From: Octopus sinensis
Taxonomy: Eukaryota
DNA length: 64,000 nt
Reading direction: 5' to 3'
Assembly (NCBI RefSeq): GCF_006345805.1
Contig: NC_043023.1
Coordinates: 6,882,001-6,946,000, forward strand
Below, in pieces: positions 357-62,395 of the stretch (positions are counted from its first letter, which is position 1; the number at the start of each line of letters is the position of its first letter). The position numbers and the translations under genes are program-made. The notes beneath the pieces are model-generated. The model searched no databases. It was given only the letters and a program-made list of their open reading frames with translations, and had not been told where the DNA came from.

Positions 357-749
357 ATATATGTGTATCCATATGTATGAATACATATACATACATACAC
401 ATATATATATACATCTAATATAGGATTAAATTTTACGAAAAAAATTTTATCAATGGCCAGCATATTAAAAAATACCTTTAAAGGTTAAATTTATAAACAA
501 CTTATAAACAAGGGTAAAAGAAAAAAATTCTAATGCAAAATATGCCGAAAATAGACAAAATGTCAATAACCATATAATTTATCACTATTAACATGCGTCT
601 CAAAGTAAGCCGACAGAAATTTCTAAAACATTCCATTATTACCGTATTGGTCCCAATTTCAGGGTTAATTCATAAGAATTTTCTCCTCGTCAGTGATAAA
701 TACGTAAGACATAAGTGAAATACTCATACCCTAGTTTTATATATATATA

Positions 750-1330
750 TCTTTATATACATAAAACTGAGAATGTGTGTCTGTCTATCTGTCTGTGTGT
801 TTCCCTAAAACTTGAGAACTACACAAACAATTTCATTCAAATTTTGTCATCGGCAAAAAAAATTTTGAACTTTTTGCCTAGGGCGAGCCCACAGCAATAT
901 CATATCTTCTCCACTACGATTCCCTAAAACTTGAGAACTACACAACCAGTTTCATTCAAATTTTACACATGCCTTACTTAGGGTCCATGTAGTTTCATGG
1001 GCAAAAAAAATGTTCAACTTCTTGCCTAGAGCGAGCCCATAGCAATATCATATCTTCTTCACTATTTCAGTATTACGTGTTAAAAGTGAAACAAAAACGT
1101 TTCTTTATTTTATGTCAAATACTTTCACTTTAACAATAAAAATAATAATAACAATTGAATTATATGTAGTAAGTAATAATTAAAATCAAACTAAAGTATA
1201 ATATAATCGTAACATAATAAAAGTAAAAATAGCAATTGGTATAAAATTGCATCGATGACTTGAACTTGAATAAGTGGTTTCACATGAATGGGAATAAATT
1301 AAAAATAAAATTAGCGTGCAGAAATGGAAT
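750..1330 (+). mobile_element. Probable non-autonomous Helitron/DINE-like element, 3' end not identified
   Basis: Starts atctttatatacataaaactgagaatgtgtgtctgtctatctgtc, like the 5' ends of the Helitron-like elements at 9302 and 16912; internal ~120-bp duplication (ttccctaaaacttgagaactacaca x2). Confidence 0.4.
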
Positions 1331-1646
1331 AGTCCAGATGGATAATAAAAAATTAAATTAAAGAAAATACTATTGTCTATAAAGTATACAATGTAGAGAA
1401 AAAAGAAGATTTGAACAAATGTCTGAAATCAATTTTTTGCGTTATTAGTAAGTTGATATATATTTCTGCTCTCGTACTATTATCTCTGTTATTATATACT
1501 GTTGGTCTACCTGTTTTTGTCTATTGTTGTCTAACGGACGAAGTAGGCCTTCGCGCGAAGACTTCGCGTTGGTGTTCCCCCCTCAGTGGGGGAAAACTAC
1601 AATTAATTTGGATTTACCAAAGGCTTGTTAAAGCCATTTGTTCAAG

Positions 1647-3019
1647 ATGGAGTCCCCCATCTCTTATTCGCCCGTGACGAGCGAGGATGAATACCCGGCG
1701 TTGTCGCCAAGTAAAAAAGAGGCGTTGTCGCCAAGAAAAAAAGAAGCGTTGTCGCCGAAGAAAAAAGAGGCGGCGTCGCCCAAGAAAATGGAAAAACCAG
1801 TACCAGCATCAACTCCAGCAAAAAAATTCGCTGAAGTGGCTGGGAAAAAGATCAAAAAAATAAATATAGAAAATTTAAAAAATTTGCAGACTGTGTAAAA
1901 AAAGAAGGCACAGAAGTGACTGTGGCCACAAACATACAAATACATGACGATATAGAAAAAAAAAGAATAATATATAAAACTTACGACACAACGAAAAAAA
2001 TGATCCAAAAAATCGAAGAAAAAAAAATAGAGTCTTGTCTAAAACCTTTTATGGATAAAATAACGTATATAAACAGAGGAAAAAGATACGGCACAGTGGA
2101 GGTGCGTTTTACTACGGAGGAGATAGCGAAGAAACTATCGATGGAGCCAATCAAAGCGGAAAACATTGTCTTACTACCATTGTATAAAGGAAAAAGGACG
2201 TCGAAAATTTCGATGAACAACATACCGCCAGAGGCAGATGCTGAATGTCTGGTGGCAGCAGTGATGGTAGGTCTGGAGGAAAAAATAAACATCCTCCAGG
2301 CCACAGTGGAGGAAGAGGAGTTCTGGAAAGGGCAGAAAATAGTGATAGCCATTCAGCGCGAGGTGCAAACACTGGAAGAAATTCCAGAAACGGTAAAGAT
2401 TAGTGAAGACGAGAAAATAACAGTTTTCGTGGAGGGCAGGAAGCCGAGGTGCTTCGGCTGCGGCAAGAAGGGTCATGTAAGGGCGGAATGCCACCCCAAC
2501 CCAAACCGCAGGAAGCACCTAAGCCAAAAGAAAAAAGATAATGTGTCACCAGAAGCAGCGTCGGATGGCCCAGAAGGGAAGACTGAAGGTGTGGAGGTGA
2601 CGGTGACAGCAGAACCAGCGGCGGAGGAAAAAAAGAGCGAGGAAAAGATAAATGAGGAGGGGTGGGCAAAAATTACCGGAAAAAAAAAAAGAAAAACGGA
2701 AACCACCCCTCCCAGAGTAATTTTAAAAAAGAAAAAAGAGTTAATGAACTCGTATATGGCCGTAAAGGCAGCAATAGCAGACTCGAAACGTGTTGGCAGC
2801 CATGGCCAAAGTGGAGAAAGTAGTGAAAAAAACGACTTTGTAATTTACAGAATAGGCCGGAAGGATTACGGGCGGATAAAGTCAGAATTCTTCCATGACG
2901 TAGGCCCACTTAGATTGGATGTGACATCTCCACATATATTTGAGGGCCTACGTCAGACTCCCCCACGAGGCCCAGAAAAAGAGTTAGAAGAACAAGAGAA
3001 AACCGAACCACTGATATAA
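1647..3019 (+). pseudogene. E1 ORF1 (gag-like): SPKK-type repeats, RRM-like segment, CX2CX4HX4C zinc knuckle; one frameshift near 1880-1900
   Basis: Track ORFs 1638-1898 and 1916-3019 join through an A-rich shift (ADCVKKEGTEVTVA is in frame with the second ORF). Knuckle CFGCGKKGHVRAEC at 2450-2491. Confidence 0.85.
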
Positions 3020-3027
3020 GGTAAGTA

Positions 3028-6000
3028 ATGGATTACATTTATGTTGGTTGTTTGAATGTGCGCGGCCTGGGAGCAGACTGGAAGCAAGGTCGCTTCCTGC
3101 ATGATATCAGGTCGCGTAATTTAGATGTTATTGTTGCTACAGAAACCCGGTTAGAGGGGCCAAGAGGTCTACTCCCCTGTTTGACGGCTACGAGAGTTTT
3201 TTCTCTCCTGGCAGTCCTACAGGCGGGAGTGGGGTGTTGGTCCTATTAAAAGAAACCGGGTTTCTGAGAAAAAGTTAATTTTTGCAGATCCAGAAGGTAG
3301 GCTGGTCGTCATGGATTTGACGTTCAGTAACGGTAAAGTTATCAGACTGGTTGCAATTACGCACCCAACCATACAGGGCAAAGTGATTATTTTCGTGAAC
3401 TAGAAAACTTTCTTGGTACTTCGCATTCATTAGTGGTGCTAGGAGACTTTAACACAATTTGCAAAGAGGATGTAGATTATGTTGGCTCGTGTCCAGATAG
3501 AAAAGGCAACAGTGGCTTCATGGAACTGCTAAGCCGCTTTGAGCTAGCAGATCCTTATAGGCTGGAATTTCCGAACGCTCCATTGTGGACATGGTCAAAC
3601 AGCGACGGATCTTCCAGGTCATATTTAGATAGAATACTAATTAGAAAAGTAGACAGTAAAATAGCTAAGTGTCCACAGTTTTACCCGATCAGCTACAGTG
3701 ATCATAAAATGGTCACTTGTAAGCTTGACATAGATAAGGTTAAAAATAGAGGATCCGGTTACTGGAAACTTAATACGTCCCTTTTGGTGATTAAGGAGTA
3801 CAAAGACCGGATTAGGAATATAATTCAGAGGGCACTATCTGGTACCATCATCATTATAACAAATGGTGGTACGCCCTCAAACGAGCCATCAAGTTTGAGT
3901 CTATTAGATATAGCATAGGAGTAGTGGCTAGAGAGGCTAGAAGGGAAACTACTCTAGTTAAGGAATTAGAGGAAGCCATGAAAACTGGCTCTGCGGCTCA
4001 GGTGGCGTCCAAGAGACTGGTGTTAAACCAGCACCTCGAGGCCAAACACATGGGCTGCATTGTCAGGGCTAGAATCCGCCATATGGGATGTGAAGGAATC
4101 AACGCCGTGAGATGGGCCGAGTGGTGGAAGCTCGGCATGGTAACGATGCCACGATTCGATCTTTGACGAACCAACAAGGTGAGTTGTATAAACGAACCCG
4201 AGGAGATGTGTGAGGCCTTTCAGGAGCACTTCGCTCAGCTTTTCGTGAGTGCGGCGGACTGGATAGGAGGAGGGCCTTTACGGACCTACTCGACGGGCTG
4301 CCGCCTTATCGGGGCGAGATGCGAGGGCTGTGAAGGGCCAATCACGCCTGAGGAGGTGGTTGAGGCAATGGCGGACTGCGGCGCGGGCAAGGCGCCGGTT
4401 TTGATGGTCTACCCTATGAGTTATATAAGAGTATGCCAGACTTGTTCGGGCACCTACTGGCGGAGGTCTATGTGAACTGGCAGCAGAACGGGCTTATACC
4501 CAGATCTGTGCGCCGGGGAGTAGTGACTCTCGTCAGAAAGGACCCGAGCAGGGGGAGTGCATTGATAATTTCAGGCCCATCACTCTGCTAAACACAGAGT
4601 TGAAGATTTTGGCCAAAGTGTTATCGAAAAGATTGGCGCGTGTCGCGATGGTCTGATCGGAGAGGCACAGACATGTGCCGTTCCGGGCAGATCCATTCAG
4701 GATAATCTCCATCTAATGCGGTACACTATAGAGGGGTTTAATAGTGATTCTGGCAAGGGTGGGGCACTGGTCCATTTAGACCAATCTAAAGCTTTTGATA
4801 GGGTCGACCATCGTTACCTGGTGTCTGCCTGGCACAGTTCGGGCTGAGCCTTGGCTTCCTCAGGTGGATTATCCAAATTTATGATAATCGACTCGGTAGT
4901 TCGGGTGAACGGCTTCTTGTCGAAGCCGTTCAAAATCAAACGCTCGGTTCGTCAAGGGTGTCCGCTCTCCCCGCTTTTGTACGTGATGGCTCTTGAGCCA
5001 TTACTGCGAAAACTGAGCGGCATCCCGAGACAGCCAGGTAATGGAAAATCAGTGTCAGCGTACGCGGATGACATCACCATCATCGTAACCGAAATGGACC
5101 ACCTATGTAAAGTAGGCAAGGCCATAGAGGTTTACGAGACGGTGACAGGAGCAAAGTTAATCGCGAAAAGTCAGTCGGCTTGCAACTCGGCACCTGGAGA
5201 GGCAAGTCGATGCCTCCTAACAGCGTCGTGGGACGTTGGACGGAGGGTCCGATTAAACTGCTAGGGGTCTGGTTCGGTCCAGACCTCCAAATAGAGAAGA
5301 ATTGGGGCGAGGTAACGAGCAAGGTGGCTGCAGTAGCCAAGACCTGGTCTTGGCGGTGGCTATCCCTGAAAGGGAGGGCGGAGGTGGCCAATGTGTTTAT
5401 CGCATCGGTTATCACCTACCGCCTTTCCGTCGTTCCTTGCCCTGATTCGTGGTTGATCAAGTTGGAAAGACAGCTCTTCTACTTCTTGTGGAAGGGCGGG
5501 AAACCACTTGTGAAACGCTCTACTTGCTGTCAACAACCGTTAAAGGGTGGGCTAGGGATGCCTTGGCTGATGATGCGCAGACATGCGCTGAGGTTAAGAC
5601 ATCTGTGGCTCTACCTGGTGGATGTGAACGGGTGTGGTCTTCGCTAGCAAAACTGATGTTTCCCAAGTTCACTAGTTTCGGTGGATGGGAAACCTGGCTG
5701 AATCGTAGATCGAAACTTGGTACTTGGTACACGGAGTGTCGCAAGGCTCTCCTGCTATTCCGTCGCTCGGGCAACGCCTGCGGTGGGGGTTCCACCACAT
5801 TCCTCTATAGAGGGTTGGTAGAGGCGGAATGTGAAGATACTCTTTGGGGGAAACCCTAGGTCTCGACGATAATCAGCTGGCCAGTCTGTTCCGACGTACG
5901 TTCGAGCCGAGGACACTGGACAACTTCCAGAAGTCTCTGGCATGGCAATGCTACAGAGGAGCTCTACCTACCTGTTCGGGATAAACTCGCAAGGCACGGT

Positions 6001-6420
6001 GGCCAAGACAGTCCGATATGTCCAAGATGCGGGCGGGATAGGGAAACCGTCCCGCACGCGATTGTTCATTGTCCGGACGTGTCTGAGGTGTGGGTTTATG
6101 CCGAACACCTGTTGTCAGGTACACGAAGAGTACAGCTGTCGACTGAGTCGATTACAAAAATTGACCCACTGGATTTCCTCGTGAATGAAGGTAAGTTTCG
6201 TTTTCTCGTTGTAGTAGCAATTGCGAAAGAGGTGATATGGAAGACGAGAATGAAAGGTTTACAGTCAGGCAAGTTCATCTCCGGCCCTGGTTTGATGAAC
6301 TATTTCATCTTTCACCTGAAAAGGAAGATAGGGCTGGAAAGAATATGCCTGACTAGGAGAGTGTATGAAGAACGATGGAAGGATGTAGCACGAAAGTTGC
6401 GAGTGAAAGATACAACATAA
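3028..6420 (+). pseudogene. E1 ORF2: AP endonuclease plus reverse transcriptase, broken by many 1-bp indels
   Basis: Motifs across frames: GCLNVRGL, DVIVATET, LGDFN, YLDRILI, SDH, YWKLN, FRPITLLN, LDQSKAFDRVDH, VRQGCPLSPLLY, YADD (5061-5072), LLGVWFG, KGGLGMP, C-terminal CPRCG...H..VHCP, HLKRKIGLER..RW. Confidence 0.93.
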
Positions 6421-6678
6421 ATGTAATACCAAGTGCAACCAAAAGTATCAGTGGGGAGGCGGGGCTCGTGGGGTCCGAGCTAAACCCGCACCCACTCCAC
6501 CCGTAACGTCTTCCGGTCTGTCCCATCATTCGATTTCTGTCCATTTATTGTAATTCATGAAAAATTTTTTAATTCGATTTAGTGTAAAAACCCATTCGTG
6601 TGTCTGACCCCTCATCAGATTGTATTGTCCCATCTTTGTTCGCCCCTTGTGGGTAATAATAAAACAACATGGAGGAAA

Positions 6679-8448
6679 TTTACCCAAGTGTGTTGTTATC
6701 TGTGACTAGACAGTGAAATTTTGTTGTGTAAATTGATTATTATCGCGCGAGGCGTTTGCCTCCACGTGTGGAAACCTTCCGAAGAAGGTGAATTGACCCT
6801 CTAGTCATGGCGACTTACGCGGGGGTCACGGGAAAGAAAAATAATGATTTCTCGATAATCGTGAAGGATGTTTTCTTTGAGAAGAGTAAACTCAAAGAAT
6901 ATGAAAAGCTATTCAAAAGGGAGGGTGATAGCGTGAAGCTAATCCCCCCCGCGAAAGCAAAAGAGGACAAAGAAAACAAGACTGTAACATATAGAACCCA
7001 AGACAAAAATACAAAGAAACTGGCAAGAGTGGAGATAGCAGAAATCGAAAAATGTCTGGGAGACATATGGGGAACGACCTACGTGAGTAGAGGCAAGAAA
7101 TTTGGTACGGTGGAGGTGAGATGTGCAACGGAAGAAATGCAGCCTCACTGGCTACCACTGTACTAAGAGCGGAAACATTTATAATGTGGCTTTCATACAA
7201 GGGAAGAAGAGGGGTCCGGGTTAAAATCCCGAATATACCCCCAGAAGTGAAAACAGAATGGCTGGCAACAGCTATTCTAGGAGCAGCAGAAGAGGAAGTG
7301 GAGGTGGAATCCTTAAGGAGTCCAACGCGATAAACTGGAGAGGATATGGGGTAGAACTGTGTTTGATGGCCACAAAAGAGGACATTGAAAGGTTCCCCTA
7401 CAGAATAGAAATTGAAGATGAGAAAACCCTCAGTGTAATTGTAGAGGGAAGAAAGCCAAACTGCTACTTGTGCGGGACAAGGGGGCACATTAAAAAAGAG
7501 TGCCCGTTATACGAATTCGTAGCGGAGTGCGAGCAGGAATTTGAAGAAAAGAAGAATACGGTGAATGAAAAAGAAAACATAGAAAAGGAAACAAAACAAC
7601 AAGAGAAAGGAAATAATAAGTCAATGAAGGAAAAAGAAATAAAAGAAAAGAAAGAAATAGAAACAAAACAGAGTCAGGAAAAGAAAAAGGAAAAAGAAAC
7701 AACAGGAAAAAAACAAGAGAAGATCAGAATAATCAACGAAAAGAAAAGACGGCACACAAAAAGAAAAAGAAAAGGAACATAAAACACGAGAGAAAGAGAG
7801 AACAGACAAAGAACCAAAAGACAAGAGAAGGAAGAAGAAAGAAAAGAAAGCAAAAAGAGAGAAAGAGAGAAACAAAGAGAGGAGAACAAGGAAGAAATAA
7901 GCCCGAAAAGAAAAACGAAGGAAAACGTAGGACGGAAACAAGATTACTGCTTCTACAAGTTAGTAACCTTCCATTTCTGCCCCGAAATGAAAGACTTAAC
8001 ATGTAATACGGAGGGACATATATGGGTCAACAGGATGACCGACCAGTGGCAGGAGACTGCTCTAATCCCCGAAGAAAGAGTCGCTGAGTTCCTCAGAGCT
8101 GCCGGAGAGAGTGTAATATTTTACACGAGTGTTCGAGTGAGAGAGCGGCTGCCTGAGGGCTCAGTGATTGACTTTAGAGAATTGAAAGCTATTATGGAAT
8201 ATGTATAGAATTGTGAGAAGAGAGAGAAGAAAGAAGAGAAAAAAGAAAATATTGTGAAATATATGTGACGAAAATGTAACCTCTCGATTCCGGGGATCGA
8301 GTGGGCATTTACATCTCATTGTAAATATTCTTTCATATGTCATTTTTTACTTTTATTTTTTCCTTTTCTTGTCATTCGCTTTCTTATTTTAAGTTCCCCG
8401 ATTGTATTGTCCCCTCTATGTTCGCCCCTTGTGGGTAGTAATAAAATC
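6679..8448 (+). mobile_element. ORF1-only (HAL1-like) non-autonomous Tx1-type element (E2)
   Basis: Frameshifted ORF1 homologue 6807-8208 (YVSRGKKFGTVEVR, NIPPEVKTEWL, VEGRKPNCYLCGTRGHIKKEC at 7462-7503, K/E-rich tract); no ORF2; same 3' tail as E1; flanked by the direct repeat acatggaggaaa (6667-6678, 8449-8460). Confidence 0.8.
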
Positions 8449-8450
8449 AC

Positions 8451-8750
8451 ATGGAGGAAAGCACCTTCGAAAAGTGTCTTGGTGCGACTATGAAAGATAT
8501 CTAATCAGAGGCAGTAAATTCGCCACAATAGAAGCAAGGTTCGAGTCAACGGAGCGTGCAAGGGAGTACTCGACTTGAACTTGCAAAGTGGAAATATTTT
8601 ATTTTTACCTTTATATCTGGGACGTAGGACGTCCCTGAAAATAATTTTTAATGCCCAACCCCTCAGAAGTAGAGGTAGGCTGGATTGTAGCCACACTTCT
8701 ATACAAGAGGGAGGACAAGATACAATTGATTGAAATTGCAAGAGGCGGGC
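8451..8750 (+). pseudogene. Third Tx1-type ORF1 fragment (E3), truncated at both ends
   Basis: MEESTFEKCLGATMKDI / YLIRGSKFATIEARFES..NILFLPLYLGRRTSLKI / PSEVEVGWIVATLL aligns by eye with E1 IESCLKPFMDKITYINRGKRYGTVEVRF..IVLLPLYKGKRTSKI..PPEADAECLVAAV. Confidence 0.75.
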
Positions 8751-8952
8751 CTACAATTTTCCAGTCTGTTATATATTTTGAGTATTGTTATCACTAGCGA
8801 TATCAAGATATAACTTTGTATTTTGTATTTTATGTGTAGATGTATATATATAGATGTACATGTAATATGTACACATATATATACACATATATACATGCAC
8901 TAGCACTATGACCTGGCAACGACGGGTCTTTAATGCTAGTATATATATATAT

Positions 8953-9262
8953 GTGGAGGCGCAATGGCCTAGTGGTTAGGGCAGCAGACTCGCGGTCGCA
9001 GGATCGCGGTTTCGATTCCCAGACCAGGCGTTGTGAGTGTTTATTGAGCAAAAACACCTAAAGCTCTACGAGGCCCCGGCAGGGGGTGGTGATCCCTGCT
9101 GTACTCTTTCACCACTCTTTCTCCCACTCTTTCTTCTGTTGGCCTGCTCGCTTAGCCAGCGGGATGGCGTCATTTGAAGGCTAAAACAATGCGAACGCAT
9201 TGTGACCAGCGATGTGTAACAACATTTGATGGTCTGGTCGGTCACGTGATCATGTGATCATG
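8953..9262 (+). mobile_element. tRNA-derived SINE, family S3
   Basis: A box tggcctagtggttagg, B-box-like ggtttcgattccc. Related copies at 10169-10472, 25215-25533(-), 25745-26052(-), 50254-50558 and 50575-50872. Confidence 0.8.
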
Positions 9263-9301
9263 ATATATATGTATGTATCTATATAATGGAGAAATTGTAC
9301 A

Positions 9302-18610: not shown

Positions 18611-19025
18611 GGTGGCGAGCTGGCAGAAACGTTGGCACACCAGGTGAAATGCTTACCGGTATTTCATCTGCCGCTATGTTCTGAGTTCAAATTCCACCGA
18701 GGTTGACTTTGCCTTTCATCCTTCCGGGGTTGATTAAATAAGTACCAGTTACGCACTGGGATCAATATAATTGACTTAATCCCTTTGTCTGTCCTTGTTT
18801 GTCCTCTCTGTGTTTAGCCGCTTGTGAGTAGTAAAGAAATAGGTATTTTGTCTGCTGCTACGTTCTGAGTTCAAATTCTGCTGAGGTCGACTTTGCCTTT
18901 CATCCTTTTGGGGTCGATAAATTAAGTACCAGTTGAATACTGGGGTCGACGTAATCGACTTAATCCATTTGTCTGTCCTTGTTTGTCCTCTCTGTGTTTA
19001 GCCCCTTGTGGGTAATAAAGAAATA
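18611..19025 (+). mobile_element. S2 SINE dimer (full unit plus 5'-truncated unit) with 21-bp TSD
   Basis: Central gcctttcatcc(tt)cggggtcgataaattaagtacc domain (Nin/Inv-domain-like, from memory); TSD ggtattatgtgtagtaccctt at 18579-18599 and 19026-19046. Confidence 0.85.
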
Positions 19026-19274
19026 GGTATTATGTGTAGTACCCTTCCTGTTGACAGTTTCCTTGCTAAAGTCATTATTGCTATAAACAAGAGTGATGAA
19101 GATGGGCTCAACTCTAGGAGGAAGTATCCAATTACCCAGCACGAGCTGACATTTGGCAAGAGCAGTATCATGAGTAAGTACAATGAATGCCGATACGTTG
19201 TGGCCAAGCCATTCAAGGTGCCAATTAGTTTTGCTGACCCAGTTAGGTGTCTCACAGACATTCCTAGTGCATTA

Positions 19275-31541: not shown

Positions 31542-31660
31542 TGTCAGAAGTGGGATTCGAACCCACGCCCACATTCGTGGACCAGAATACTCAATGTTCC
31601 GGTTAAGGTGCATTACATGTACCTTGAGTCTGGCGCCTTAGACCGCTCGGCCATCCTGAC
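31542..31660 (-). tRNA. tRNA-Leu(CAA) with 35-nt intron
   Basis: GTCAGGATGGCCGAGCGGTCTAAGGCGCCAGACTCAAG / intron / TTCTGGTCCACGAATGTGGGCGTGGGTTCGAATCCCACTTCTGACA; T-run terminator. Confidence 0.95.
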
Positions 31661-31792
31661 AGCTTCGGTAAACGGATCATCTTTAAGCCATGTCTTAGTC
31701 AACTGAAGCCATGACGTGTGCAATTTTTTAACACAATTCTTTCAACTTCAATGATAAATATCAAAGTGAGTTATATACAGTAGCGGTAACAC

Positions 31793-31933
31793 ATCGTGAC
31801 GTATATTTGCCATTTCAATATGGCTAACCCCTAAGGGTGGATGCTACTGTAGTGTGTCCTCCTGGGGCTAAGCACTACAGTAGCATCCACCCTTAGGGGT
31901 AGCCATATTGAAATGGCAAATATACGTCACGAT
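31793..31933. mobile_element. Short palindromic (hairpin) MITE
   Basis: atcgtgacgtatatttgccatttcaatatggcta...tagccatattgaaatggcaaatatacgtcacgat, ~60-bp arms; half copy at ~26520-26567. Confidence 0.75.
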
Positions 31934-31944
31934 CTTTCAACTTC

Positions 31945-32159
31945 ATCTACTCTTTTACTTGTTTCAGTCATTTGACTGCGGCCATGCTGGAGCACCGCCT
32001 TTAGTCGAGCAAATCGACCCCGGGACTTATTCTTTGTAAGCCCAGTACTTATTCTATCGGTCTCTTTGGCCGAACCGCTAAGTGACGAGGACGTAAACAC
32101 ACCAGCATCGGTTGTCAAGCAATGCTAGGGAGTCAAACACAGACACACAAACACACACA

Positions 32160-32205
<46 letters not shown>

Positions 32206-32371
32206 TACGACAGGCTTCTTTCAGTTTCCGTCTACCAAATCCACTCACAAGGCATTGGTCGGCCCGGGGCTATAGCAGAAGACACTTGCCCAAGATGCCA
32301 CGCAGTGGGACTGAACACGGAACCATGTGGTTGGGAAGCAAGCTACTTACCACGCAGCCACTGCTGCGCCT
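31945..32371 (-). mobile_element. Young S1 SINE inserted in the tRNA array
   Basis: Near-consensus S1, unlike the decayed S1 spacers around it. Confidence 0.85.
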
Positions 32372-32533
32372 TTTGTTGTGTCTGAAAAAAAAAAGTTTTG
32401 GGATTTGTGAATTTATTTTGCTTGTTTACGGAGCCGCGAAATGTGGTTAAACCCGAAACCACGTGGTCCAAAGCGTATTAGACTGACCTGGATACCAACT
32501 TGCAAGAAAATGAAAATAAAATAAAAGGATATC

Positions 32534-32652
32534 TGTCAGAAGTGGGATTCGAACCCACGCCCACATTCGTGGACCAGAATACTCAATGTTCTGGTTAAGG
32601 TGCATTACATGTACCTTGAGTCTGGCGCCTTAGACCACTCGGCCATCCTGAC
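32534..32652 (-). tRNA. tRNA-Leu(CAA), intron, U16 variant
   Basis: Exons intact; GAGTGGT D-loop. Confidence 0.93.
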
Positions 32653-33275
32653 ATCTTCGGTAAAGAGATCATCTTTAAGCCAGTCTTAGTAGATTGTAGC
32701 CATAACGTATACGATTTTTTAAAACCCAATTCTTTCAACTTATTTAATTGTGTCTGAAAAAATATTGTTTGGATTTGAGAATTTCTTTTTGTTTTTTTTT
32801 AAATTAATATTTGGCGTACCTACACAAATGTGCTCCATGCTGGGATCCCGTGTTGAAGTATTTCAAGTCGAATAAATCGCCCCCAGAACTTATTTAAAAA
32901 AAATAAATACTGGGGCATTTGTTCTATGGGGGCTCCTTTACCGAACTGTTATCTTACGGGGGACGTAAACACACCACCACCGGTTGTGAAGCCCGGACGG
33001 TACATACACACACAGATGACGGGCTTCCTGACGTTTTCTGTCGACCAACACTTCTCACAACGGGCATTCCGGGATTATAGAAGAGTACACTTGCTCAAGG
33101 TAGCGTGAAGCACAACTGAATCTGAGACCACGTGGTTACAGACGAAATTCCTAACTACTCACTATTTTTTTAGACACAACAAATGAAGTCGAAAGAATTG
33201 GGTTTTAAAAAATGGTACACGTTATGGCTTCAGTTGACTAAGAAATAGTTTAAAGATGACCGCTTCTTCGCAGTT

Positions 33276-33389
33276 GTCAGGATGGCCGAGCGGTCTAAGG
33301 CGCCACACTCAAGGTACATGTAATGCACCTTAACCAGAACATTGAGTATTCTGGTCCACGAATGTGGGCGTGGGTTCGAGTCTCACTTC
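33276..33389 (+). pseudogene. Inverted, 3'-truncated tRNA-Leu(CAA)
   Basis: G30C, T-arm changes and missing terminal TGACA; lies inside an inverted segment. Confidence 0.85.
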
Positions 33390-33555
33390 ACGACTTCATT
33401 TGTTGTGTCTAAAAAAAATAGTTTTTGGATTTGTGAATTTATTTCCTTGATTACGGTTCCGCAAAATGTGGTTAAACCTGAAACCACATGGTCCCAAGCG
33501 AATTAGACTGACCTGGATACCAACTTGTAAGAAAGTAAAATAAAAAAAGGGTACT

Positions 33556-33674
33556 TGTCAGAAGTGGGATTCGAACCCACGCCCACATTCGTGGACCAGA
33601 ATACTCAAAGTTCCGGTTAAGGTGCATTACATGTACCTTGAGTCTGGCGCCTTAGACCACTCGGCCATCCTGAC
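33556..33674 (-). tRNA. tRNA-Leu(CAA), intron, U16 (B-type)
   Basis: Exons intact. Confidence 0.93.
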
Positions 33675-34233
33675 AGCTTCGGTAAGGAGATCATCTTAAA
33701 GCCATTTCTTAGTCGACTATAGTCAGAAAGCGTACAATTTTTTTAAACCCAATTCTTTCAACTTATTTGATTGTGTCTAAAGAAATATTGTTTGGATTTA
33801 GGAATTTCTTTTGCATTTTTAAAATTAATATTTGGCATACCTACACAAACGTGCTCTATGCTGGGATTCCGTGTTGAAGAATTTCCGGTCGAATAAATCG
33901 ACCCCAGTACTTATTTTTAAAAAATATATGCTGGGGTATTTGTTCCACCGAGCCTCCTTTACCGAACTATTATCTTACGGGGGATGTAAACACATCACCA
34001 CCGGTTGTGAAGCGATGACGGTACATACACACAGACACACATACGACGGGCTTCCTCACAGTTTCTCTTGACTAACTCTGCTCGCAACAATCATTCCGGG
34101 ATTATAGAAGAGTACACAGGCCTAAGGCGCCGTAAAGTAGAACTGAAACCGAGACCACGTGCTTACAAATCACATTCCTAACTACTCAACCGTCCTAGAA
34201 CACTACGCAAAAAAAAAGAAGAAAAACACAATC

Positions 34234-34352
34234 TGACAGAAGTGGGATTCGAACCCACGCCCACATTCGTGGACCAGAATACTCAATGTTCTGGTTAAGG
34301 TGCATTATATGTACCTTGAGTCTGGCGCCTTAGACCGCTCGGCCATCCTGAC
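34234..34352 (-). tRNA. tRNA-Leu(CAA), intron, C16 (A-type), acceptor mismatch U2:U71
   Basis: Plus strand reads tgacaga instead of tgtcaga. Confidence 0.75.
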
Positions 34353-34605
34353 AGCTGCGATAAATTGTTTGTCTTTAAATCATTTCTTAGTCAACTGAAG
34401 CCATGACGTGCAATTTTTTAACCCAATTCTTTCGACTTCATTTGTTGTGTCTGAAAAGAAAAGTTTTTGGATTTGTGAATTTATTTTCCTTGTTTACGGT
34501 GCTGCGAAATGCGGTGAAACCCGAAACCACGTTGTCCAAAGCGAATTAGACTGACCTGGACACCAACTAGCAAGAAAATAAAATAAAATAAAATAAAAGG
34601 TTATC

Positions 34606-34724
34606 TGTCAGAAGTGGGATTCGAACCCACGCCCACATTCGTGGACCAGAATACTCAATGTTCCGGTTAAGGTGCATTAAATGTACCTTGAGTCTGGCGC
34701 CTTAGACCACTCGGCCATCCTGAC
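34606..34724 (-). tRNA. tRNA-Leu(CAA), intron, U16 (B-type)
   Basis: Exons intact. Confidence 0.93.
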
Positions 34725-35288: not shown

Positions 35289-35324
35289 TGTCAGAAGTGG
35301 GATTCGAACCCACGTCCACATTCG
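35289..35324 (-). pseudogene. tRNA-Leu 3'-half module
   Basis: Same 36-nt fragment and linker as at 31320. Confidence 0.85.
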
Positions 35325-35395
35325 AATGAACACACAACATACGTATTAACCGTATTAACACACAACATTGCAAAGAAAAAGAAAAAAAAACAATC

Positions 35396-35514
35396 TGTCA
35401 GAAGTGGGATTCGAACCCACGCCCACATTCGTGGACCAGAATACTCAATGTTCTGGTTAAGGTGCATTGCATGTACCTTGAGTCTGGCGCCTTAGACCGC
35501 TCGGCCATCCTGAC
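35396..35514 (-). tRNA. tRNA-Leu(CAA), intron, C16 (A-type)
   Basis: Exons intact. Confidence 0.93.
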
Positions 35515-36830: not shown

Positions 36831-37302
36831 CCCAGTATTTAAAAAAAAATAAATAATGGGGTTTTTGTCACATCGAGCCTCCTTTACCGAACTGTTATCT
36901 TACGAGGGACGTAAACACACCACCACCGGTTGTGAAACGATGCACACAGCCGCCGAGGTCGACTTTGCCTTTCATCCTTTCGGGGTCGATAAATTAAGCA
37001 CCAGTTACGCACTGGGGTCGGTGCAATCGACTTAATACCTATGTCTGTCCTTGTTTGTCCCCTCTATGTTTAGCCCCTTGTGGGTAGTAAAAGAAATAGG
37101 TACAGACACACATACGATGGGCTTCCTGACGTTTCCTGTCGACCAACACTTCTCACAACCGTCATTCCGGGATTATAAAAGAGTACACTTGCTCAATGTA
37201 CCGTGAAATACAACTAAATCCGAGGCCATGTGTTTACGAACGAAATTCCTAACTTCTCACTTAACAGTACTATGCAAAAAAAAAAGAATAAAAAATACAA
37301 TC

Positions 37303-40659: not shown

Positions 40660-40854
40660 CCTATTTCTTTACTATCCACTAGGGGCTAAACACAGAGGGG
40701 ACGAACAAGGACAGACATAGGTATTAAGTCGATTACATCGACTCCAGTGTGTAACTGGTACTTATTTAATCGACCCCGAAAGGATGAAAGGCAAAGTTGA
40801 CCTTTCATCCTTTCGGGGTCGATTAAATGGATGAAAGGTCGACTTTGCCTTTCA
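40660..40854 (-). mobile_element. S2 SINE with inverted 5' part and 12-bp TSD
   Basis: TSD tctcaaaaaata (40648-40659, 40855-40866); orientation switches at ~40801. Confidence 0.75.
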
Positions 40855-42932: not shown

Positions 42933-42937
42933 CTTGA

Positions 42938-43611
42938 TTTATCGGCCCCGAAAGGATGAAAGGCAAAGTCGACCTCGGCGGAATTTGAACTCAGAACGTA
43001 ACGGCAGACGAAATACCTACTTCTTTACTACCCACAAGGGGCTAAACACAGAGGGGACAAGCAACAACAGACAAAGGGATTAAGTCGATTACATCGACCC
43101 CAGTGCGTAACTGGTACTTGATTTATCGACCCCGAAAGGATGAAAAGCAAAGTCGACCACGGCAGAATTTGAACTCAGAACGTGGCGGCACCCGAAATAC
43201 CTATTTCTTTACTACCCACAAGGGGCTGAACACAGAGGGGCCAAACAAGGATAGACAAACGGATTAAGTCGATTACATCGACTCTAGTGCGTAACTGGTA
43301 CTTATTTAATTGACCCCGAAAGGACGAAAGGCAAAGTCGACCTCGGCGGAATTTGAACTCAGAATGTAGCGGCAGCCGAAATACCTATTTCTTTACTACC
43401 CACAAGGGACACAGAGGGGACAAACAAGGACAGACAAAGGGATTAAGTCAATTACATCGACTCCAGTGCGTAACTGGTACTTAATTTATCGACCCCGAAA
43501 GGATGAAAGGCAAAGTCGACCTCGGCGGAATTTGAACTCAGAACGTAACGGCAGACGAAATACTGCTAATCATTTCGCCCGCCGTGCTAACGTCTCTGCC
43601 AGCTCGCCGCC
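42938..43611 (-). mobile_element. S2 SINE tandem multimer (one full, two 5'-truncated and one partial unit of ~180 bp)
   Basis: Junctions gaaataggtatttcg at ~43015, 43197 and 43382. Confidence 0.85.
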
Positions 43612-49029: not shown

Positions 49030-51485
49030 TAAGAGCGGTGAAGGAGAACTACAACGGTGGTGTGCAGATTGGTGGAGAAAGGCTGCGCAATCTGAGATAC
49101 GCTGATGATAGAACCCTCATAAGTAAAAGCAAGGACGAACTGCTGCAGATGATACGCAAAGTGAAAGACATGAGTGCACAAAGTGACCGATTCCTGAATG
49201 TAAAGAAGACAAAGATCTTGGTGGTGGATAAGGCGGCGAGCTGGCAGAAACGTTAGCACGCCGGGTGAAATGTGTAGCCGTATTTCGTCTGCTGTTACGT
49301 TCTGAGTTCAAATTCCACCGAGGTCGACTTTGCCTTTCATTCTTTCGGGGTCGATAAATTAAATACCAGTTACGCACTGGGGCCGATATAAACGACTCAA
49401 TCCCTTCGTCTGTCCTTGTTTGTCCCCTCTGTGTTTAGCCCCTTCTGGGCAGTAAAGAAATATATATGGGAAAGTATGGAAGAACATCATCACCACAATC
49501 GGTTGCACCCACAGCAGCACATTTAAACTCCGACGTCTGGCAGCTGACTTCGCAGACTCCCATAAAATTATTATTTAAAGTTATTTTACCAAATTCTTCA
49601 TTATTTTCAAAATAATTGAAACAAATGCAGTGTGTTTCAACAGAAATATGGTAACAAAAGGGTTAAAGTGATCCAAGTTAAAACTTTCCATCAAAATAAA
49701 GACAAAGTTAATACAGTTCTATATTTAAGAGATGAGGAATTATGTACATTATTTACATAAGGCGCAGGAGTGGCTGTGTGGTAAGTAGCTTGTTTACCAA
49801 CCACATGGTTCCGGGTTCAGTCCCTTCGTTTGTCTGTTCTTGCTTGTCCTCTCTGTGTTTAGCCCCTTGTGGGTAGCAAAGAAATAGATAAGTACAAGAC
49901 AGACCAAGCTGACTTCACTTTGGACGGAGAGATGATCCAGGAAGTGGATGATTTTGTGTACTTGGGATCCATAATCAGCACCAGTGGATCAAGTACACCA
50001 GAGATATGGAGAAGGCTTGCAACTACGAGGCAAGTGGTACAAGATATGGAGAACATCTAGGAGAGTCGTGGCGTGTCAGTGCTGCTGAAGATAAGGCTAC
50101 TTCGGGCTGCCGCTTTCTCTATTGTGACATATGGCTGCGAGTCGTGGACAATGTTGAAAGCAGATGAGAAAAGAGTGAATGCTTTTGAAATGTGGTGTTA
50201 CCGCAGAATCCTTTGAGCGTCGTGGATGGAGAGAAGGATGAACAACTGGGCAGTGGAGGCATATGGCCTAGTAGTTAGAGCAACGGTCTCGCAGTCGAGG
50301 GATCGTGGGTTCGAATCTCAGACTGGGCGATGTGTGTGTTTATGAGCGAAACACCTAAGCTCCACGCGGCTCCAGCAGAAGGTAATGGCGAACTTCTGCT
50401 GACTCTTTCATCGCAACTTTTTCTCACTCTTTCCTCCTGCATCTTGCAGCTCACCTGCGATGGACTGGCGTCCCATCCAGGTGGGGGAACGTATACACCA
50501 AGGAAACTAGGAAACTGGTCCTTATGAACCAGGCATCGCTCAAGAAGGAACAAACAATATATGTGTGTGTGTGTGTGAGGCACATGGCTTAGTGGTTAGA
50601 GCAGTGGACTCGCAGTCGAGGGATGGCAGGTTTGAATCTCAGACCGGACAATGTGTGTGTTTTTGAGTGAAACATCTAAGCCCCACTCGGCTCCGGCAGA
50701 AGGTAATGGTGAACTTCTGCTGACACTTTCTCTCACTCTTTCCTCCTGCATGATGCAGCTCACCTGCGACGGATCGGCGTCCCGTCCAGGTGGGGGAACC
50801 TATACGCCAAGGAAACCGGGAAACCGGCCCTTATGAGCCAGGCATGGCTCGAGAAGAACAAACAACAACTGGGTACTAGAAAAGCTCAGTTGCGAGATGA
50901 CGCTTCGGGCCAGCCTCATCTGGCACCTGTGTCGGTGGCACATAAAAAACACCATCCGAGCGTGGCCGTCTGGCACTTGTGTCGGTGGCACATAAAAAAC
51001 ACCATCCGAGCGTGGCCGTCTGCCAGCCTCGTCTGGCACCTGTGTTGGTGGCACATAAAATCACCCACTACACTCTCGGAGTGGTTGGCGTTAGGAAGGG
51101 CATCCAGCTGTAGAAACACTGCCAGATAAGACCAGAGCCTGGTGCAGCCTTCTGGCTTCCCAGATCCCAGTTGAACCGTCCAACCCATGGAAAGCGGACG
51201 TTAAATGATGATGATGATGATGATGATGGAACATCACGAAGCGGAAGCTATGGTTCTTTGGCCACGTCATGCGCTGGGATGGACTTGAGCGAACGATCAT
51301 AACTGGCAAGGTGAACGGCAGACGTAAAAGAGGCAGACCACCCCCACTTCTTGGCTGAAGGACATCGCAGCCCAGGATTGTCTTTATTCTCGGCTGTCCA
51401 TGGGGTAGAGGACAGGAGAAGGTGGCAGGACATCATGATGACCACAACATCGCATAGTGTGACACCTGACTAGGATGATGATGAT
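49030..51485 (+). mobile_element. 5'-truncated RTE-clade LINE interrupted by nested SINEs
   Basis: GVQIGGERLRNLRYADD (49038-49230), EVDDFVYLGSII..YGCESWT..FEMWCYRRIL (49890-50250), FFGHVMR..GKVNGRRKRGRP (51230-51345), (GAT)n tail; S2, S3 and RTE-UTR insertions lie between. Confidence 0.85.
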
Positions 51486-52620: not shown

Positions 52621-52852
52621 AGGTGGTGAGATGGCAGAAACATTAGCACGCTGGACGAAATGCCTAGCATTATTCCATCTGCCGTTAGGTTCTGATTTCA
52701 AATTCCGCCGAGGTCAACTTTGCCTTTCATCCATTTGGGGTCGATAAATTAAGTAACAGTTACGCACTGCGGTTGATGTAATCGACTTAATCCCTTTGTC
52801 TGTCCTTGTTTGTCCCCTCTATGTTTAGCCCCTTGTAGGCAATAAAGAAATT
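52621..52852 (+). mobile_element. S2 SINE inserted into an S1 SINE
   Basis: TSD agaagctatagtagaa on both sides. Confidence 0.8.
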
Positions 52853-56809: not shown

Positions 56810-56862
56810 CTATCTCTGTCTCTGTCTGTCTCTCTCTCTGTCTCTGTCTCTCTGTCTCTCTC
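56520..56862. repeat. (TATC)n then (TCTG/TC)n microsatellite
   Basis: Source of the IYLS ORFs. Confidence 0.95.
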
Positions 56863-56863
56863 T

Positions 56864-57368
56864 TTCATCAACTTCTTCAAGTATCACTTGAAGAGGAAAG
56901 TGAGAGTAGAGAGGCAAGTTTTGTCTAGTGAATGTTTAAAAAAAAGATGGGTGAATGTAGCAAGGATGGCACGTATGAATGACGAAGCCACCTTGACTAT
57001 GATCCTATGAACCGTAAAAATTAATACAGAGAGTTGCTTATTTGTAAAAAAAATATAACATGTGACTTCATTGACCGAAGTTACAATGGGCTTTTCCGTT
57101 GGCTTTTCTTTCCATGGGTAAACCTCACCTGTCCTCCCCTTTACACTTTATATTGACATTTCTGTGATAGCGATCCCTATTGATCGATTTTTTTTCTTTT
57201 TCCTTTTATTTTTTATCCCCCCTCTTTTTTTTTTGCTTTCCTTTTTCTTTCCTTTTACAATCCCTTTTGATCGAAAACCAAACCCCCTTTTTTTATCCCC
57301 AAAAAGAAAAGCTCTACCTTGTAATTTGTCCCGTCTGTGTGCAGCCCTGTGTGGCTAATAAAGAAACA
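56864..57368 (+). mobile_element. 5'-truncated copy of a second Tx1-like LINE family (E4)
   Basis: FINFFKYHLKRKVRVERQVLSSECLKKRWVNVARM..* (stop 57008-57010) is homologous to the E1 C-terminus LMNYFIFHLKRKIGLERICLTRRVYEERWKDVARK; tail ttgtcccgtctgtgtgcagccctgtgtggctaataaagaaa. A reverse UTR copy lies at ~62632-62815. Confidence 0.8.
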
Positions 57369-62169: not shown

Positions 62170-62395
62170 ACCTATTTCTTTATTACCCACAAGGGGCTAA
62201 ACATAGAGGGGACAAACAAGGACTGACATAGGTATTAAGTTGATTACATCGACCCCAGTGCATAACTGGTACTTAATTTATCGACCCCGAAAGGATGAAA
62301 GGCAAAGTCAACCTCGGCGGAATTTGAACTCAGAACATAATGACAGACGAAATACTGCAAAGCATTTCACCCGGCATGCTAACGTTTCTACCTCC
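62170..62395 (-). mobile_element. S2 SINE
   Basis: Full-length reverse copy; tail runs into (GTAT)n. Confidence 0.8.

What the first reader, a model, noticed from the sequence alone, without database searches (positions are those of the whole stretch)
1500..8460. Three-tier retroposon system: Tx1-like LINE, ORF1-only element and an abundant SINE share one 3' tail
Seen: E1 ends ttgtattgtcccatctttgttcgccccttgtgggtaataataaaac (6618-6666). E2 ends ttgtattgtcccctctatgttcgccccttgtgggtagtaataaaat (8400-8448). E4 ends ttgtcccgtctgtgtgcagccctgtgtggctaataaagaaa (~57325-57367). The S2 SINE ends ttgtcccctct(a/g)tgtttagccccttgtgggtagtaaagaaata (e.g. 37060-37097, 52810-52850). All keep a small terminal stem-loop: GCCC-cttgt-GGGT, or AGCC-ctgtgt-GGCT in E4. 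Established: SINEs borrow the 3' tail of stringent-type partner LINEs; HAL1 elements are ORF1-only L1 derivatives; mammalian L1 recognises poly(A) instead. Inference: a Tx1-group RT recognising a structured tail mobilises both a HAL1-like element and one of the dominant SINEs of this genome. I do not know of this partnership being described.
Basis: partly seen in the sequence, partly recalled or inferred. Interest (0 to 1): 0.82.

Follow-up and report, generated by a model that had tools for sequence, protein, structure and literature searches.

The report
Octopus LINE, half-LINE and SINE share tail
An octopus jumping gene of the L1/Tx1 type, a shorter relative that keeps only its first gene, and a very common short repeat all end in the same ~50-base signal, so they probably use the same copying enzymes; this is a new example of a known principle.

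Summary
E1 (1430-6665) is an L1/Tx1-type LINE. E2 (6679-8447) has only an ORF1. A truncated sister LINE (E4, 56862-57368) and about 10 copies of a 232-nt SINE (S2) end in the same ~47-52-nt module, at 76-94% identity.

E1 and E2 share no other DNA apart from short 5'UTR motifs. Their ORF1 proteins are 32% identical.

New here: in Octopus vulgaris, E2 is a multi-copy family found as single copies and as tandem arrays. E1 and E2 always sit at one 12-bp target (ACATGGAGGAAA) inside a repeated host sequence, with a target duplication at every junction. A diverged E1b/E2b pair uses a second target 300 bp away. So E2 most likely borrows the machinery of E1-type LINEs.

The 4-bp hairpin with a CUUGU loop recurs, with different stem bases, at the 3' ends of relatives only 38% identical in ORF2. 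It is thermodynamically weak.

S2 and E4 are dispersed, not at that target. The SINE's driver is therefore probably a sister LINE, not E1.

No description of this partnership was found in the searchable literature. Each component is a known kind.

The parts
738..1416 (.). Left part of the repeated host sequence 'T' that carries the insertions.
   Evidence: Homologous to L012 8613-9309 (88.6%) and to L013 about 6900-7330. The left boundary, next to a (TA)n run, is the same in the window and L012, and the outer flanks differ there.
1417..1429 (+). Degenerate left copy of the target site (AAATGTCTGAAAT). This junction is empty for E2 in the window.
   Evidence: In L012 an E2 copy sits exactly here, flanked by a 17-bp duplication ACATGGCTCCAAGCTAT. 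In L011 the junction reads ACATGGAGGAAAT.
1430..6665 (+). E1, a full-length L1/Tx1-type LINE. 5'UTR 1430-1646; ORF1 1647-3019, with one in-frame stop at 1896; ORF2 3028-6420; 3'UTR 6421-6665.
   Evidence: Pfam finds Exo_endo_phos, RVT_1 and zf-RVT. The best PDB hit is human L1 ORF2p, 222 bits. The window copy carries about 20 private 1-bp deletions. The L012 copy (98.5% identical) has an intact 1129-aa ORF2.
6620..6665 (+). E1 3' tail module: pyrimidine tract TTGTCCCATCT, hairpin 6642-6654 (GCCC-CTTGT-GGGT), then AATAATAAAAC.
   Evidence: The hairpin and 3' end are identical, and the whole tail nearly identical, in four E1/E1b copies. Covariation.
6667..6678 (+). Target-site duplication ACATGGAGGAAA, left copy for E2.
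   Evidence: The same 12 nt recur at 8449-8460. L011 and L012 have E1 followed directly by ACATGGAGGAAA + gcaccttcg, which is the empty site.
6679..8447 (+). E2, an ORF1-only non-autonomous element. 5'UTR 6679-6806; ORF1 6807-8208, with two frameshifts and one stop in this copy; 3'UTR 8209-8447.
   Evidence: Its ORF1 is homologous to E1 ORF1 (32.5% over 234 aa, E = 4e-35). It has a zf-CCHC knuckle. Copies 92-97% identical occur in O. vulgaris, in arrays and singly.
8402..8447 (+). E2 3' tail module; hairpin 8424-8436.
   Evidence: 93.6% identical to the E1 tail. Among 11 E2 copies the last 50 nt diverge 0.0036 per site, against 0.023 for the UTRs as a whole.
8449..8460 (+). Target-site duplication ACATGGAGGAAA, right copy for E2.
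8461..8940 (.). Right part of host sequence T. It contains the second target site (site B, AATTTTCCAGTCTGTTATA, 8755-8773).
   Evidence: Homologous to L011 18063-18604, L012 16251-16802 and L013 16210-16400. All end at ...gggtctttaatgctagta, and the outer flanks differ. Site B is used by E1b/E2b in L013.
56862..57368 (+). E4, a 5'-truncated LINE of a sister family (ORF2 C-terminus plus about 350 nt of 3'UTR), inserted in a (TATC)n microsatellite. Tail 57326-57368; hairpin AGCC-CTGTGT-GGCT at 57343-57356.
   Evidence: tblastn: 60% identical to the C-terminus of P0001 and 42% to E1. Sequence.
18611..19026 (+). S2 SINE: a full-length unit plus a 184-nt second unit, each ending in the tail. The duplication tattatgtgtagtaccctt flanks the pair.
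36950..37099 (+). S2 SINE, 5'-truncated copy with tail.
40661..40803 (-). S2 SINE, 5'-truncated copy with tail.
42933..43611 (-). S2 SINE multimer: one full unit plus 2.5 units of 184 nt.
49232..49462 (+). S2 SINE, full length.
49785..49887 (+). Short element with a different tRNA-like head (the head of another SINE family in the window) joined to the S2-type tail.
   Evidence: Only one copy was seen.
52622..52851 (+). S2 SINE, full length, with a 16-bp duplication AGAAGCTATAGTAGAA.
62172..62392 (-). S2 SINE, near full length, inside a (GTAT)n repeat.

Best explanation
Window 738-8940 is a repeated host sequence ('T') that has been hit at one 12-bp site by two retroposons.

E1 is a 5.2-kb target-specific LINE of the L1/Tx1 group. 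E2 is a 1.77-kb non-autonomous element that encodes only an ORF1-type protein with a CCHC knuckle.

Besides short 5'UTR motifs, they share a 47-nt 3' module: a pyrimidine tract, a 4-bp hairpin with loop CUUGU, and an AAUAAA-like end with no poly(A).

Inferred mechanism. The E1-type ORF2 protein binds this module on the RNA. It nicks the target just 5' of ACATGG. It starts reverse transcription at the module rather than on a poly(A) tail, which is the 'stringent' mode. E2 RNA carries the same module and is copied in trans at the same site. Each insertion duplicates the target, so further insertions pile up as mixed head-to-tail arrays.

Related LINEs with other target preferences, such as E4, carry variants of the same module. 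A tRNA-derived SINE (S2, about 4% of this window) has captured one such variant. It is probably mobilised by such a dispersed sister LINE rather than by E1.

Shown here: the anatomy, the shared tail, the shared target and duplications, the multi-copy status of E2, hairpin covariation, and tail conservation.

Inferred only: RT binding to the tail, trans-mobilisation, and which LINE drives S2.
For: - LINE identity: Pfam finds APE, RT and zf-RVT. L1 ORF2p is the best solved-structure match. The best named homolog is a coral protein that its depositors named after Tx1 (319 bits).
- The tail is the only E1/E2 similarity BLAST found. ORF1 proteins are 32.5% identical.
- E2 family in O. vulgaris: arrays of at least 4 units (L008) and at least 8 units (L011), and single copies (L012).
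- Filled and empty sites: E1 is followed by the target and then T-right in L011 and L012, whereas the window has E2 between two target copies. In L012 an E2 lies between two copies of ACATGGCTCCAAGCTAT, where the window has an uninterrupted junction.
- A diverged pair, E1b + 2 x E2b, shares a different target (AATTCCAGTCTGTTATA) in another T copy.
- Array junctions have variable 5' ends.
- E2 divergence by codon position is 0.0126 / 0.0091 / 0.0236. The UTRs as a whole diverge 0.023 and the last 50 nt 0.0036.
- Hairpin: 98% of cells paired, 3 of 4 pairs with changes on both sides, 0 of 500 shuffles as good.
- CTTGT-loop hairpins occur at the 3' ends of L002 and of L003/L007, against 2 elsewhere in 79 kb.
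- L007 has a 14-bp duplication and ends hairpin-hairpin-AAATAAAA with no poly(A).
- S2 and E4 tails are 76-87% identical to the E1/E2 tails and 83% to each other.
- S2 has duplications at unrelated sites.
Against: - The octopus hairpin is no more stable than in shuffled sequence (z = -0.6 to +0.6). In E1 the minimum-energy fold uses other pairs.
- E4 keeps 4 bp only through a register shift.
- The distant relatives were noticed because they had the hairpin. The background-rate control mitigates this but does not remove it.
- None of 12 E2 copies has an intact full-length ORF1.
- Junction types are similar within an array, so part of the array growth may be unequal crossing-over.
- The E1 loci were sampled through neighbouring E2 genes, so E1's site specificity is known from only 4 loci.
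- No LINE with a tail closer than 87% to S2 was found, so the SINE's partner is not identified.
- Tx1-clade placement was not tested by phylogeny.
Confidence: 0.68

Rival explanations
1. E2 is not a trans-mobilised retroposon. It is a macrosatellite: one old ORF1 + tail fragment next to E1, amplified by unequal crossing-over and spread by segmental duplication of the whole T composite.
For: E2 occurs in long head-to-tail arrays. Junction variants are array-specific. All 12 copies have broken ORF1s. Wherever flanks were seen, E2 lies in the same host sequence.
Against: - Single E2 copies lie on either side of E1 in different loci, each with perfect locus-specific duplications of 12 and 17 bp.
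- 5' ends are variable, as after reverse transcription.
- An E2b/E1b pair sits at a different site.
- The excess of third-codon-position changes and the 6-fold conserved tail imply descent from functional masters.
Confidence: 0.12
2. The shared tail is only a transcript-end signal (the AAUAAA region) or a SINE fragment that landed at LINE ends. It is not an RT recognition element.
For: The module contains AATAAA in E1, E2 and E4. The octopus hairpin is thermodynamically weak.
Against: - Elements end 1-5 nt after AATAAA with no poly(A), so reverse transcription starts at a fixed internal point.
- E1/E2-specific tail variants (GATTGTATTGTCCC, TGTTCGCCCC, TAATAAAA) are constant in 4 + 16 copies and differ from S2. 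No SINE body precedes them.
- Relatives from other organisms keep the hairpin with different stems.
- S2 consensus reads GTAAAGAAATAG, not AATAAA.
Confidence: 0.1
3. E1 itself, mobilises the S2 SINE.
For: The E1 and S2 tails are 83% identical with an identical hairpin. An intact E1 ORF2 exists in O. vulgaris.
Against: All E1/E2 copies whose flanks were seen are at one 12-bp target or at a second fixed site. S2 copies have unrelated duplications and flanks. S2 is equally close to E4, a dispersed sister LINE.
Confidence: 0.1

Closest known systems
Tx1-clade target-specific LINEs (Xenopus Tx1L in the Tx1D transposon; crocodilian Tx1-Mar with SINEU; Kibi/Koshi in microsatellites)
   Same: L1-like ORF2 (APE, RT, C-terminal zinc domain) and an ORF1 with a CCHC knuckle. 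Insertion at one specific site inside another repeated element. A non-autonomous partner sharing the target, as argued for SINEU and Tx1-Mar (PMC4494074).
   Different: The partner here encodes ORF1 and also shares a defined 3' tail. Clade membership was not tested by RT phylogeny. The nature of the host sequence T is unknown.
HAL1 (half-L1), HeT-A and Ag-Sponge: ORF1-only non-autonomous LINEs
   Same: Encodes only an ORF1p homolog, keeps LINE-like 5' and 3' ends, and is multi-copy (PMC5786205; PMC5753468).
   Different: E2 is not a recent internal-deletion derivative of its neighbour (32% ORF1 identity). It is target-specific and forms mixed arrays with its LINE. It depends on a specific tail rather than on poly(A).
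Stringent-type LINE/SINE pairs with a 3' stem-loop (eel UnaL2/UnaSINE1; maize LINE1-1_ZM with ZmSINE2/3)
   Same: About 50 nt of shared 3' end, a small conserved hairpin with variable stem and conserved loop, and no reliance on poly(A). The maize case is also in the L1 clade (PMC3472496).
   Different: This is an animal L1/Tx1-group case. A 2012 survey found only 3 SINEs with L1 tails among more than 800 L1 families, all from plants or algae. The octopus hairpin is only 4 bp, and the exact partner LINE of the SINE is not identified.
Octopus SINEs OK, OR1 and OR2 (Ohshima and Okada 1994) and the L1-Tx1 families annotated in O. vulgaris
   Same: Same host group. SINEs make up about 11.6% of the O. 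vulgaris genome. Thirteen recently active L1-Tx1 families averaging about 5.4 kb are reported (PMC13282606).
   Different: I could not test whether S2 is one of OK/OR1/OR2, because those sequences are not held. The papers I could read describe no LINE partner, shared tail or ORF1-only element.

Membership tests
L1/Tx1-group non-LTR retrotransposon (E1) | ORF2 with an N-terminal APE endonuclease, an RT and a C-terminal zinc-binding domain. | tested here: met
   Pfam on the intact L012 copy: Exo_endo_phos 1.8e-11, RVT_1 2.5e-31, zf-RVT 1.5e-8. The stitched window copy gives the same domains. Human L1 ORF2p aligns over residues 3-865, 222 bits.
L1/Tx1-group non-LTR retrotransposon (E1) | RT-domain phylogeny places the element inside the Tx1 clade rather than L1 proper. 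| tested here: inconclusive
   No labelled Tx1 or L1 reference set was available. The best named hit is a coral protein whose depositors named it 'Transposon TX1 uncharacterized 149 kDa protein' (319 bits), against 222 bits for human L1. Plant L1s score about 150 bits.
L1/Tx1-group non-LTR retrotransposon (E1) | Target-sequence-specific insertion, typical of the Tx1 clade. | tested here: met
   E1 lies at ACATGGAGGAAA in T in the window, L011 and L012. E1b lies at AATTCCAGTCTGTTATA in L013. Only four loci, three of them reached through neighbouring E2 genes.
L1/Tx1-group non-LTR retrotransposon (E1) | ORF1 of the RRM + CCHC type, not the mammalian Transposase_22 type. | tested here: inconclusive
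   The CCHC knuckle is found by Pfam in E2 and P0101 and is visible in E1 (CFGCGKKGHVRAEC). There is no Transposase_22 hit. The RRM fold is not shown: the AlphaFold model had pLDDT 37.8.
ORF1-only non-autonomous LINE (HAL1-like) (E2) | Encodes an ORF1p homolog and no ORF2. | tested here: met
   E2 ORF1 matches E1 ORF1 with E = 4e-35. The unit is 1.77 kb between duplications and has no RT or APE similarity.
ORF1-only non-autonomous LINE (HAL1-like) (E2) | Multi-copy, with the hallmarks of retrotransposition (duplications, variable 5' ends). | tested here: met
   At least 16 copies in 5 loci. Duplications of 12 and 17 bp; variable 5' junctions.
ORF1-only non-autonomous LINE (HAL1-like) (E2) | Derived from its partner LINE by internal deletion, as HAL1 is from L1. 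| tested here: not met
   The only DNA similarity to E1 is the 47-nt tail and short 5'UTR motifs. ORF1 is 32% identical. E2 is an old independent lineage, or derives from an unseen LINE.
ORF1-only non-autonomous LINE (HAL1-like) (E2) | ORF1 kept under selection, with intact copies. | tested here: inconclusive
   None of 12 copies is fully intact. Divergence by codon position is 0.0126 / 0.0091 / 0.0236, which indicates past purifying selection.
Stringent-type LINE/SINE partnership | The SINE 3' end is homologous to the LINE 3' end. | tested here: met
   S2 against E1, E2, E2b and E4: 83-87% over 51-54 nt. Pattern statistics.
Stringent-type LINE/SINE partnership | A conserved RNA structure in the shared tail, supported by compensatory changes. 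| tested here: met
   98% of cells paired, 3 of 4 pairs with changes on both sides, 0 of 500 shuffles as good, and slid controls at 25-48%. Background control. Caveats: the hairpin is thermodynamically weak and E4 needs a register shift.
Stringent-type LINE/SINE partnership | SINE and partner LINE share an insertion-site signature. | tested here: not met
   This holds for E1. E1 and E2 are at one fixed target, whereas S2 duplications are unrelated (AGAAGCTATAGTAGAA; TATTATGTGTAGTACCCTT). For E4-type LINEs it could not be tested, with only one copy.
Stringent-type LINE/SINE partnership | The tail is required for mobilisation. | not testable with these tools
   Needs a retrotransposition assay.
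tRNA-derived SINE (S2) | A 5' head derived from a tRNA, with A and B boxes. | tested here: inconclusive
   A B-box-like GAGTTCAAATTCC is visible in the consensus. Rfam tRNA at gathering threshold hits only the tRNA-Leu gene array, not S2. ARAGORN found nothing.

The most novel reading that the evidence does not exclude
The pyrimidine tract + CUUGU hairpin + AAUAAA end may be an ancient RT-recognition module of a Tx1-like LINE lineage widespread in marine invertebrates. That would make it a stringent-type member of the L1 superfamily in animals. Capture of this module by tRNA-derived heads would then underlie one of the large octopus-specific SINE expansions. The matched LINE/ORF1-only pairs with co-varying target sites (site A against site B) would be a natural experiment showing that ORF1-only elements inherit target specificity from their LINE in trans.
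Probability: 0.3. Interest if true: 0.7.

Novelty: new member of a known kind. Interest (0 to 1): 0.5.

Why it matters
SINEs make up more than a tenth of octopus genomes, and their expansion is often linked to cephalopod genome novelty. The papers I could read name no LINE that drives them.

This locus gives a concrete candidate machinery: the L1/Tx1 group, with a defined 50-nt tail and a 4-bp hairpin. It also offers a naturally intact ORF2 copy to test.

It adds an animal case to the very few L1-superfamily lineages that appear to recognise a specific 3' structure rather than poly(A).

It also shows an ORF1-only element in a target-specific LINE lineage. There, shared target sites provide unusually direct genomic evidence for trans-mobilisation.

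Tried and rejected
- Structure prediction of the E2 ORF1 protein, to test for an RRM fold. The model had pLDDT 37.8 and pTM 0.19, so no fold search was run.
- Two metagenome scans for the tail. The first found nothing. The second gave 8 chance matches in GC-rich microbial contigs with no tail context.
- Similarity of S2 to the MIR/CORE consensus. The score of 19 was below the shuffled mean of 20.8, so I do not call S2 a CORE-SINE or equate it with OR1/OR2.
- The idea that ACATGGAGGAAA is the elements' own 5' end, or that similarity continues downstream. Rejected: similarity stops after 12 nt, and the flanking copies are locus-specific.
- The idea that the E1 tail belongs to an upstream E2 copy interrupted by E1. 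Rejected: there is no E2 sequence upstream of E1, and E1-specific tail variants are constant in 4 copies.
- A search for an uninterrupted copy of host sequence T in the window found none.
- L001, the contig of the closest ORF2 relative (P0001, 55-58% identical), ends 113 nt after the stop, before any tail.
- The L006 3'UTR is cut off by the contig end.
- The octopus genome paper of Albertin et al. is not held.


Full report
**What is in the window**

The window is TE-rich octopus DNA. Close matches (92-98%) lie in Octopus vulgaris assembly GCA_951406725.2.

A 31-nt tail pattern has 10 matches against none in 100 shuffles. The 14-nt core GCCCCTTGTGGGTA has 13 matches against 0.42 expected.

The E1 and E2 tails align at 93.6% over 47 nt. 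That is the only similarity BLAST found between the two elements.

**E1 (1430-6665)**

E1 is a LINE. ORF1 spans 1647-3019 and carries a CCHC knuckle. ORF2 spans 3028-6420. After stitching across frameshifts, ORF2 hits Exo_endo_phos, RVT_1 and zf-RVT.

Two further copies were recovered from O. vulgaris. Aligned against them, about 20 of the window's frameshifts are private 1-bp deletions. The copy in locus L012 is 98.5% identical and keeps an intact 1129-aa ORF2.

The best solved-structure relative is human L1 ORF2p, at 222 bits over residues 3-865. The best named database relative is a coral protein that its depositors named 'Transposon TX1 uncharacterized 149 kDa protein', at 319 bits.

So E1 belongs to the L1/Tx1 group. 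Tx1-clade placement is likely but was not tested by phylogeny.

**E2 (6679-8447)**

E2 holds one ORF, 6807-8208, broken twice by frameshifts and once by a stop in this copy. Its protein is 32.5% identical to E1 ORF1 over 234 aa (E = 4e-35). It has the CCHC knuckle and no RT or endonuclease.

Searching this protein found five annotated O. vulgaris proteins at 81-88% identity. Their loci show that E2 is a family:
- L008 is a head-to-tail array of at least 4 units.
- L011 holds at least 8 units followed by an E1 copy.
- L012 holds one E2 followed by an E1.

None of 12 units has a fully intact ORF1. Divergence among 11 aligned units is 0.0126, 0.0091 and 0.0236 per site at codon positions 1, 2 and 3. 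It is 0.023 in the UTRs as a whole but only 0.0036 in the last 50 nt. The copies therefore descend from masters in which both the ORF and the tail were under selection.

In the window the E1 tail is followed by ACATGGAGGAAA, then E2, then ACATGGAGGAAA again. Similarity stops after those 12 nt.

In L011 and L012, E1 is followed by ACATGGAGGAAA and directly by the sequence that follows E2 in the window. That is an empty site for E2.

In L012 an E2 lies just upstream of E1 between two copies of ACATGGCTCCAAGCTAT. The window has an uninterrupted junction at that position, 1417-1429.

Every array junction is tail + a copy of the target + a variable E2 5' end.

The flanking DNA is itself a repeat, here called T. 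It covers window 738-1416 on the left and 8461-8940 on the right. Its right end is the same in four loci, and its left end is the same in the two loci where it was examined. The outer flanks differ among loci.

In a fourth T copy (L013), a diverged pair is stacked at a different site. There are two E2b units (65% aa identity to E2) and one E1b. The site is AATTCCAGTCTGTTATA, which corresponds to window 8755-8773.

So each LINE and its ORF1-only companion use the same target, and the target differs between pairs. Repeated target-specific insertion by one endonuclease, acting on E2 RNA in trans, best explains this. It is also the behaviour reported for Tx1-clade elements and, on the same argument, for SINEU with Tx1-Mar (PMC4494074).

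**The tail and its hairpin**

The octopus tails read: pyrimidine tract, then GCCC-CUUGU-GGGU, then A(A/G)UAAUAAAA(C/U), with no poly(A).

Folding gives no stability beyond shuffled sequence (z from -0.6 to +0.6). The case for the hairpin rests on comparison, not on energy.

ORF2 relatives only 38-39% identical, from other organisms, end as follows:
- L003/L007: AGGC-CUUGU-GCCU, then a second hairpin, then AAAUAAAA.
- L002: UGAC-CUUGU-GUCA.
- L005: CGGC-UUGAC-GCCG.

L007 is a single copy with a 14-bp duplication, which fixes its 3' end.

CTTGT flanked by a 4-bp stem occurs at these 3' ends and only twice elsewhere in 79 kb of the same loci.

On a 13-sequence alignment, 98% of cells pair and 3 of 4 pairs change on both sides. 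No shuffle of 500 reaches the observed values, and slid controls give 25-48% pairing.

E4 keeps 4 bp only with a 6-nt loop, which is a register shift and not a clean covariation.

**The SINE**

S2 is about 232 nt and covers 4.2% of the window, in about 13 copies or fragments at 84-98% identity to their consensus.

Only its last 50 nt or so resemble the LINEs. Identity is 83-87% to E1, E2, E2b and E4 alike.

Its duplications are unrelated to site A or site B.

E4 is a 5'-truncated sister LINE. Its ORF2 C-terminus is 60% identical to P0001 and 42% to E1. It sits in a (TATC)n microsatellite.

The tail family is therefore shared by LINEs with different target preferences. The SINE's driver is more likely a dispersed sister than E1. 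No LINE with a closer tail was available to me.

**Comparison with what is known**

- SINEs borrowing LINE tails, and conserved-loop, variable-stem hairpins, are established, including one plant L1 lineage. [quoted passage not shown]
- ORF1-only derivatives are known for L1 (HAL1), Jockey (HeT-A) and CR1 (Ag-Sponge) (PMC5786205).
- Octopus L1-Tx1 families and SINEs are annotated: 13 recently active L1-Tx1 families, and SINEs at 11.6% of the genome (PMC13282606).
- The papers I could read name no partner LINE, shared tail or ORF1-only element. Repbase and Dfam could not be checked.

**Verdict**

This is a new member of known kinds, of moderate interest.

The strongest new point is the matched, target-specific LINE/ORF1-only pairs.

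The weakest points are the unidentified partner of the SINE, the small number of loci, and the lack of a phylogeny.

Noticed in passing
window 31542-41396 (-): Sixteen tandem copies, roughly 1 kb apart, of a 119-nt intron-containing tRNA gene. By eye it is tRNA-Leu with anticodon CAA. Rfam tRNA scores are 32-49.5 bits. ARAGORN in bacterial mode missed them all.
   Followed up: partly
window 18611-19026 (+), 42933-43611 (-); L012 472-914 (-): S2 SINEs occur as multimers: one full unit followed by 184-nt units that lack the first 48 nt. They are joined at a GTA microhomology between the tail end and an internal GTATTTCG. The origin is not resolved (dimeric subfamily, template jumping or slippage).
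   Followed up: partly
window 49785-49887 (+): A short element whose tRNA-like head matches the head of a different, longer SINE family (for example the copy at 54990-55150, minus strand) but which ends in the S2-type tail. It may be a tail swap. Only one copy was seen.
   Followed up: no
window 738-1416 and 8461-8940; L011, L012, L013: The host sequence T, about 1.2 kb, recurs on different chromosomes and is bordered by (TA)n runs. Its right end is fixed in four loci and its left end in the two examined. It has no ORF, no Rfam hit and no obvious terminal inverted repeats. In L013 the roughly 300 bp between sites A and B are absent. What kind of element T is remains unknown.
   Followed up: partly
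window 1545-1560 and 6741-6751; L013 about 11320 and about 9365: The 5'UTRs of E1, E1b, E2 and E2b share a palindromic (T)TCGCGCGA(A) block, and a GAAGG...GTTAAAGCC block close to the ATG. These may be common promoter or 5'UTR modules.
   Followed up: partly
window 3018-5153: About 20 single-base deletions in E1 are private to the window copy, relative to two O. vulgaris copies that are 95-98.5% identical. This pattern could reflect indel errors of a long-read assembly rather than real decay.
   Followed up: partly
L003/L004 (ENA ERZ21867824 ctg88761c): A distant relative (38% ORF2 identity, with a 719-aa ORF1) forms head-to-tail arrays of near-identical full-length units, period about 6.8 kb. 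A single copy of the same family (L007) has a 14-bp duplication.
   Followed up: partly
window 56473-56861 and 57369-57420: E4 interrupts a long (TATC)n microsatellite, and the same repeat lies on both sides. Some Tx1-clade families are microsatellite-specific, but one copy proves nothing.
   Followed up: no
window 44100-45500: A 1.4-kb pure pyrimidine (CT-rich) block with nested 29-189-nt periodicities. GC skew is -0.58.
   Followed up: no
window 8953-9300: Another SINE family with a tRNA-like head (ggaggcgcaatggcctagtggttagggc...) abuts the right end of T. It is absent at that position in L011 and L012.
   Followed up: no
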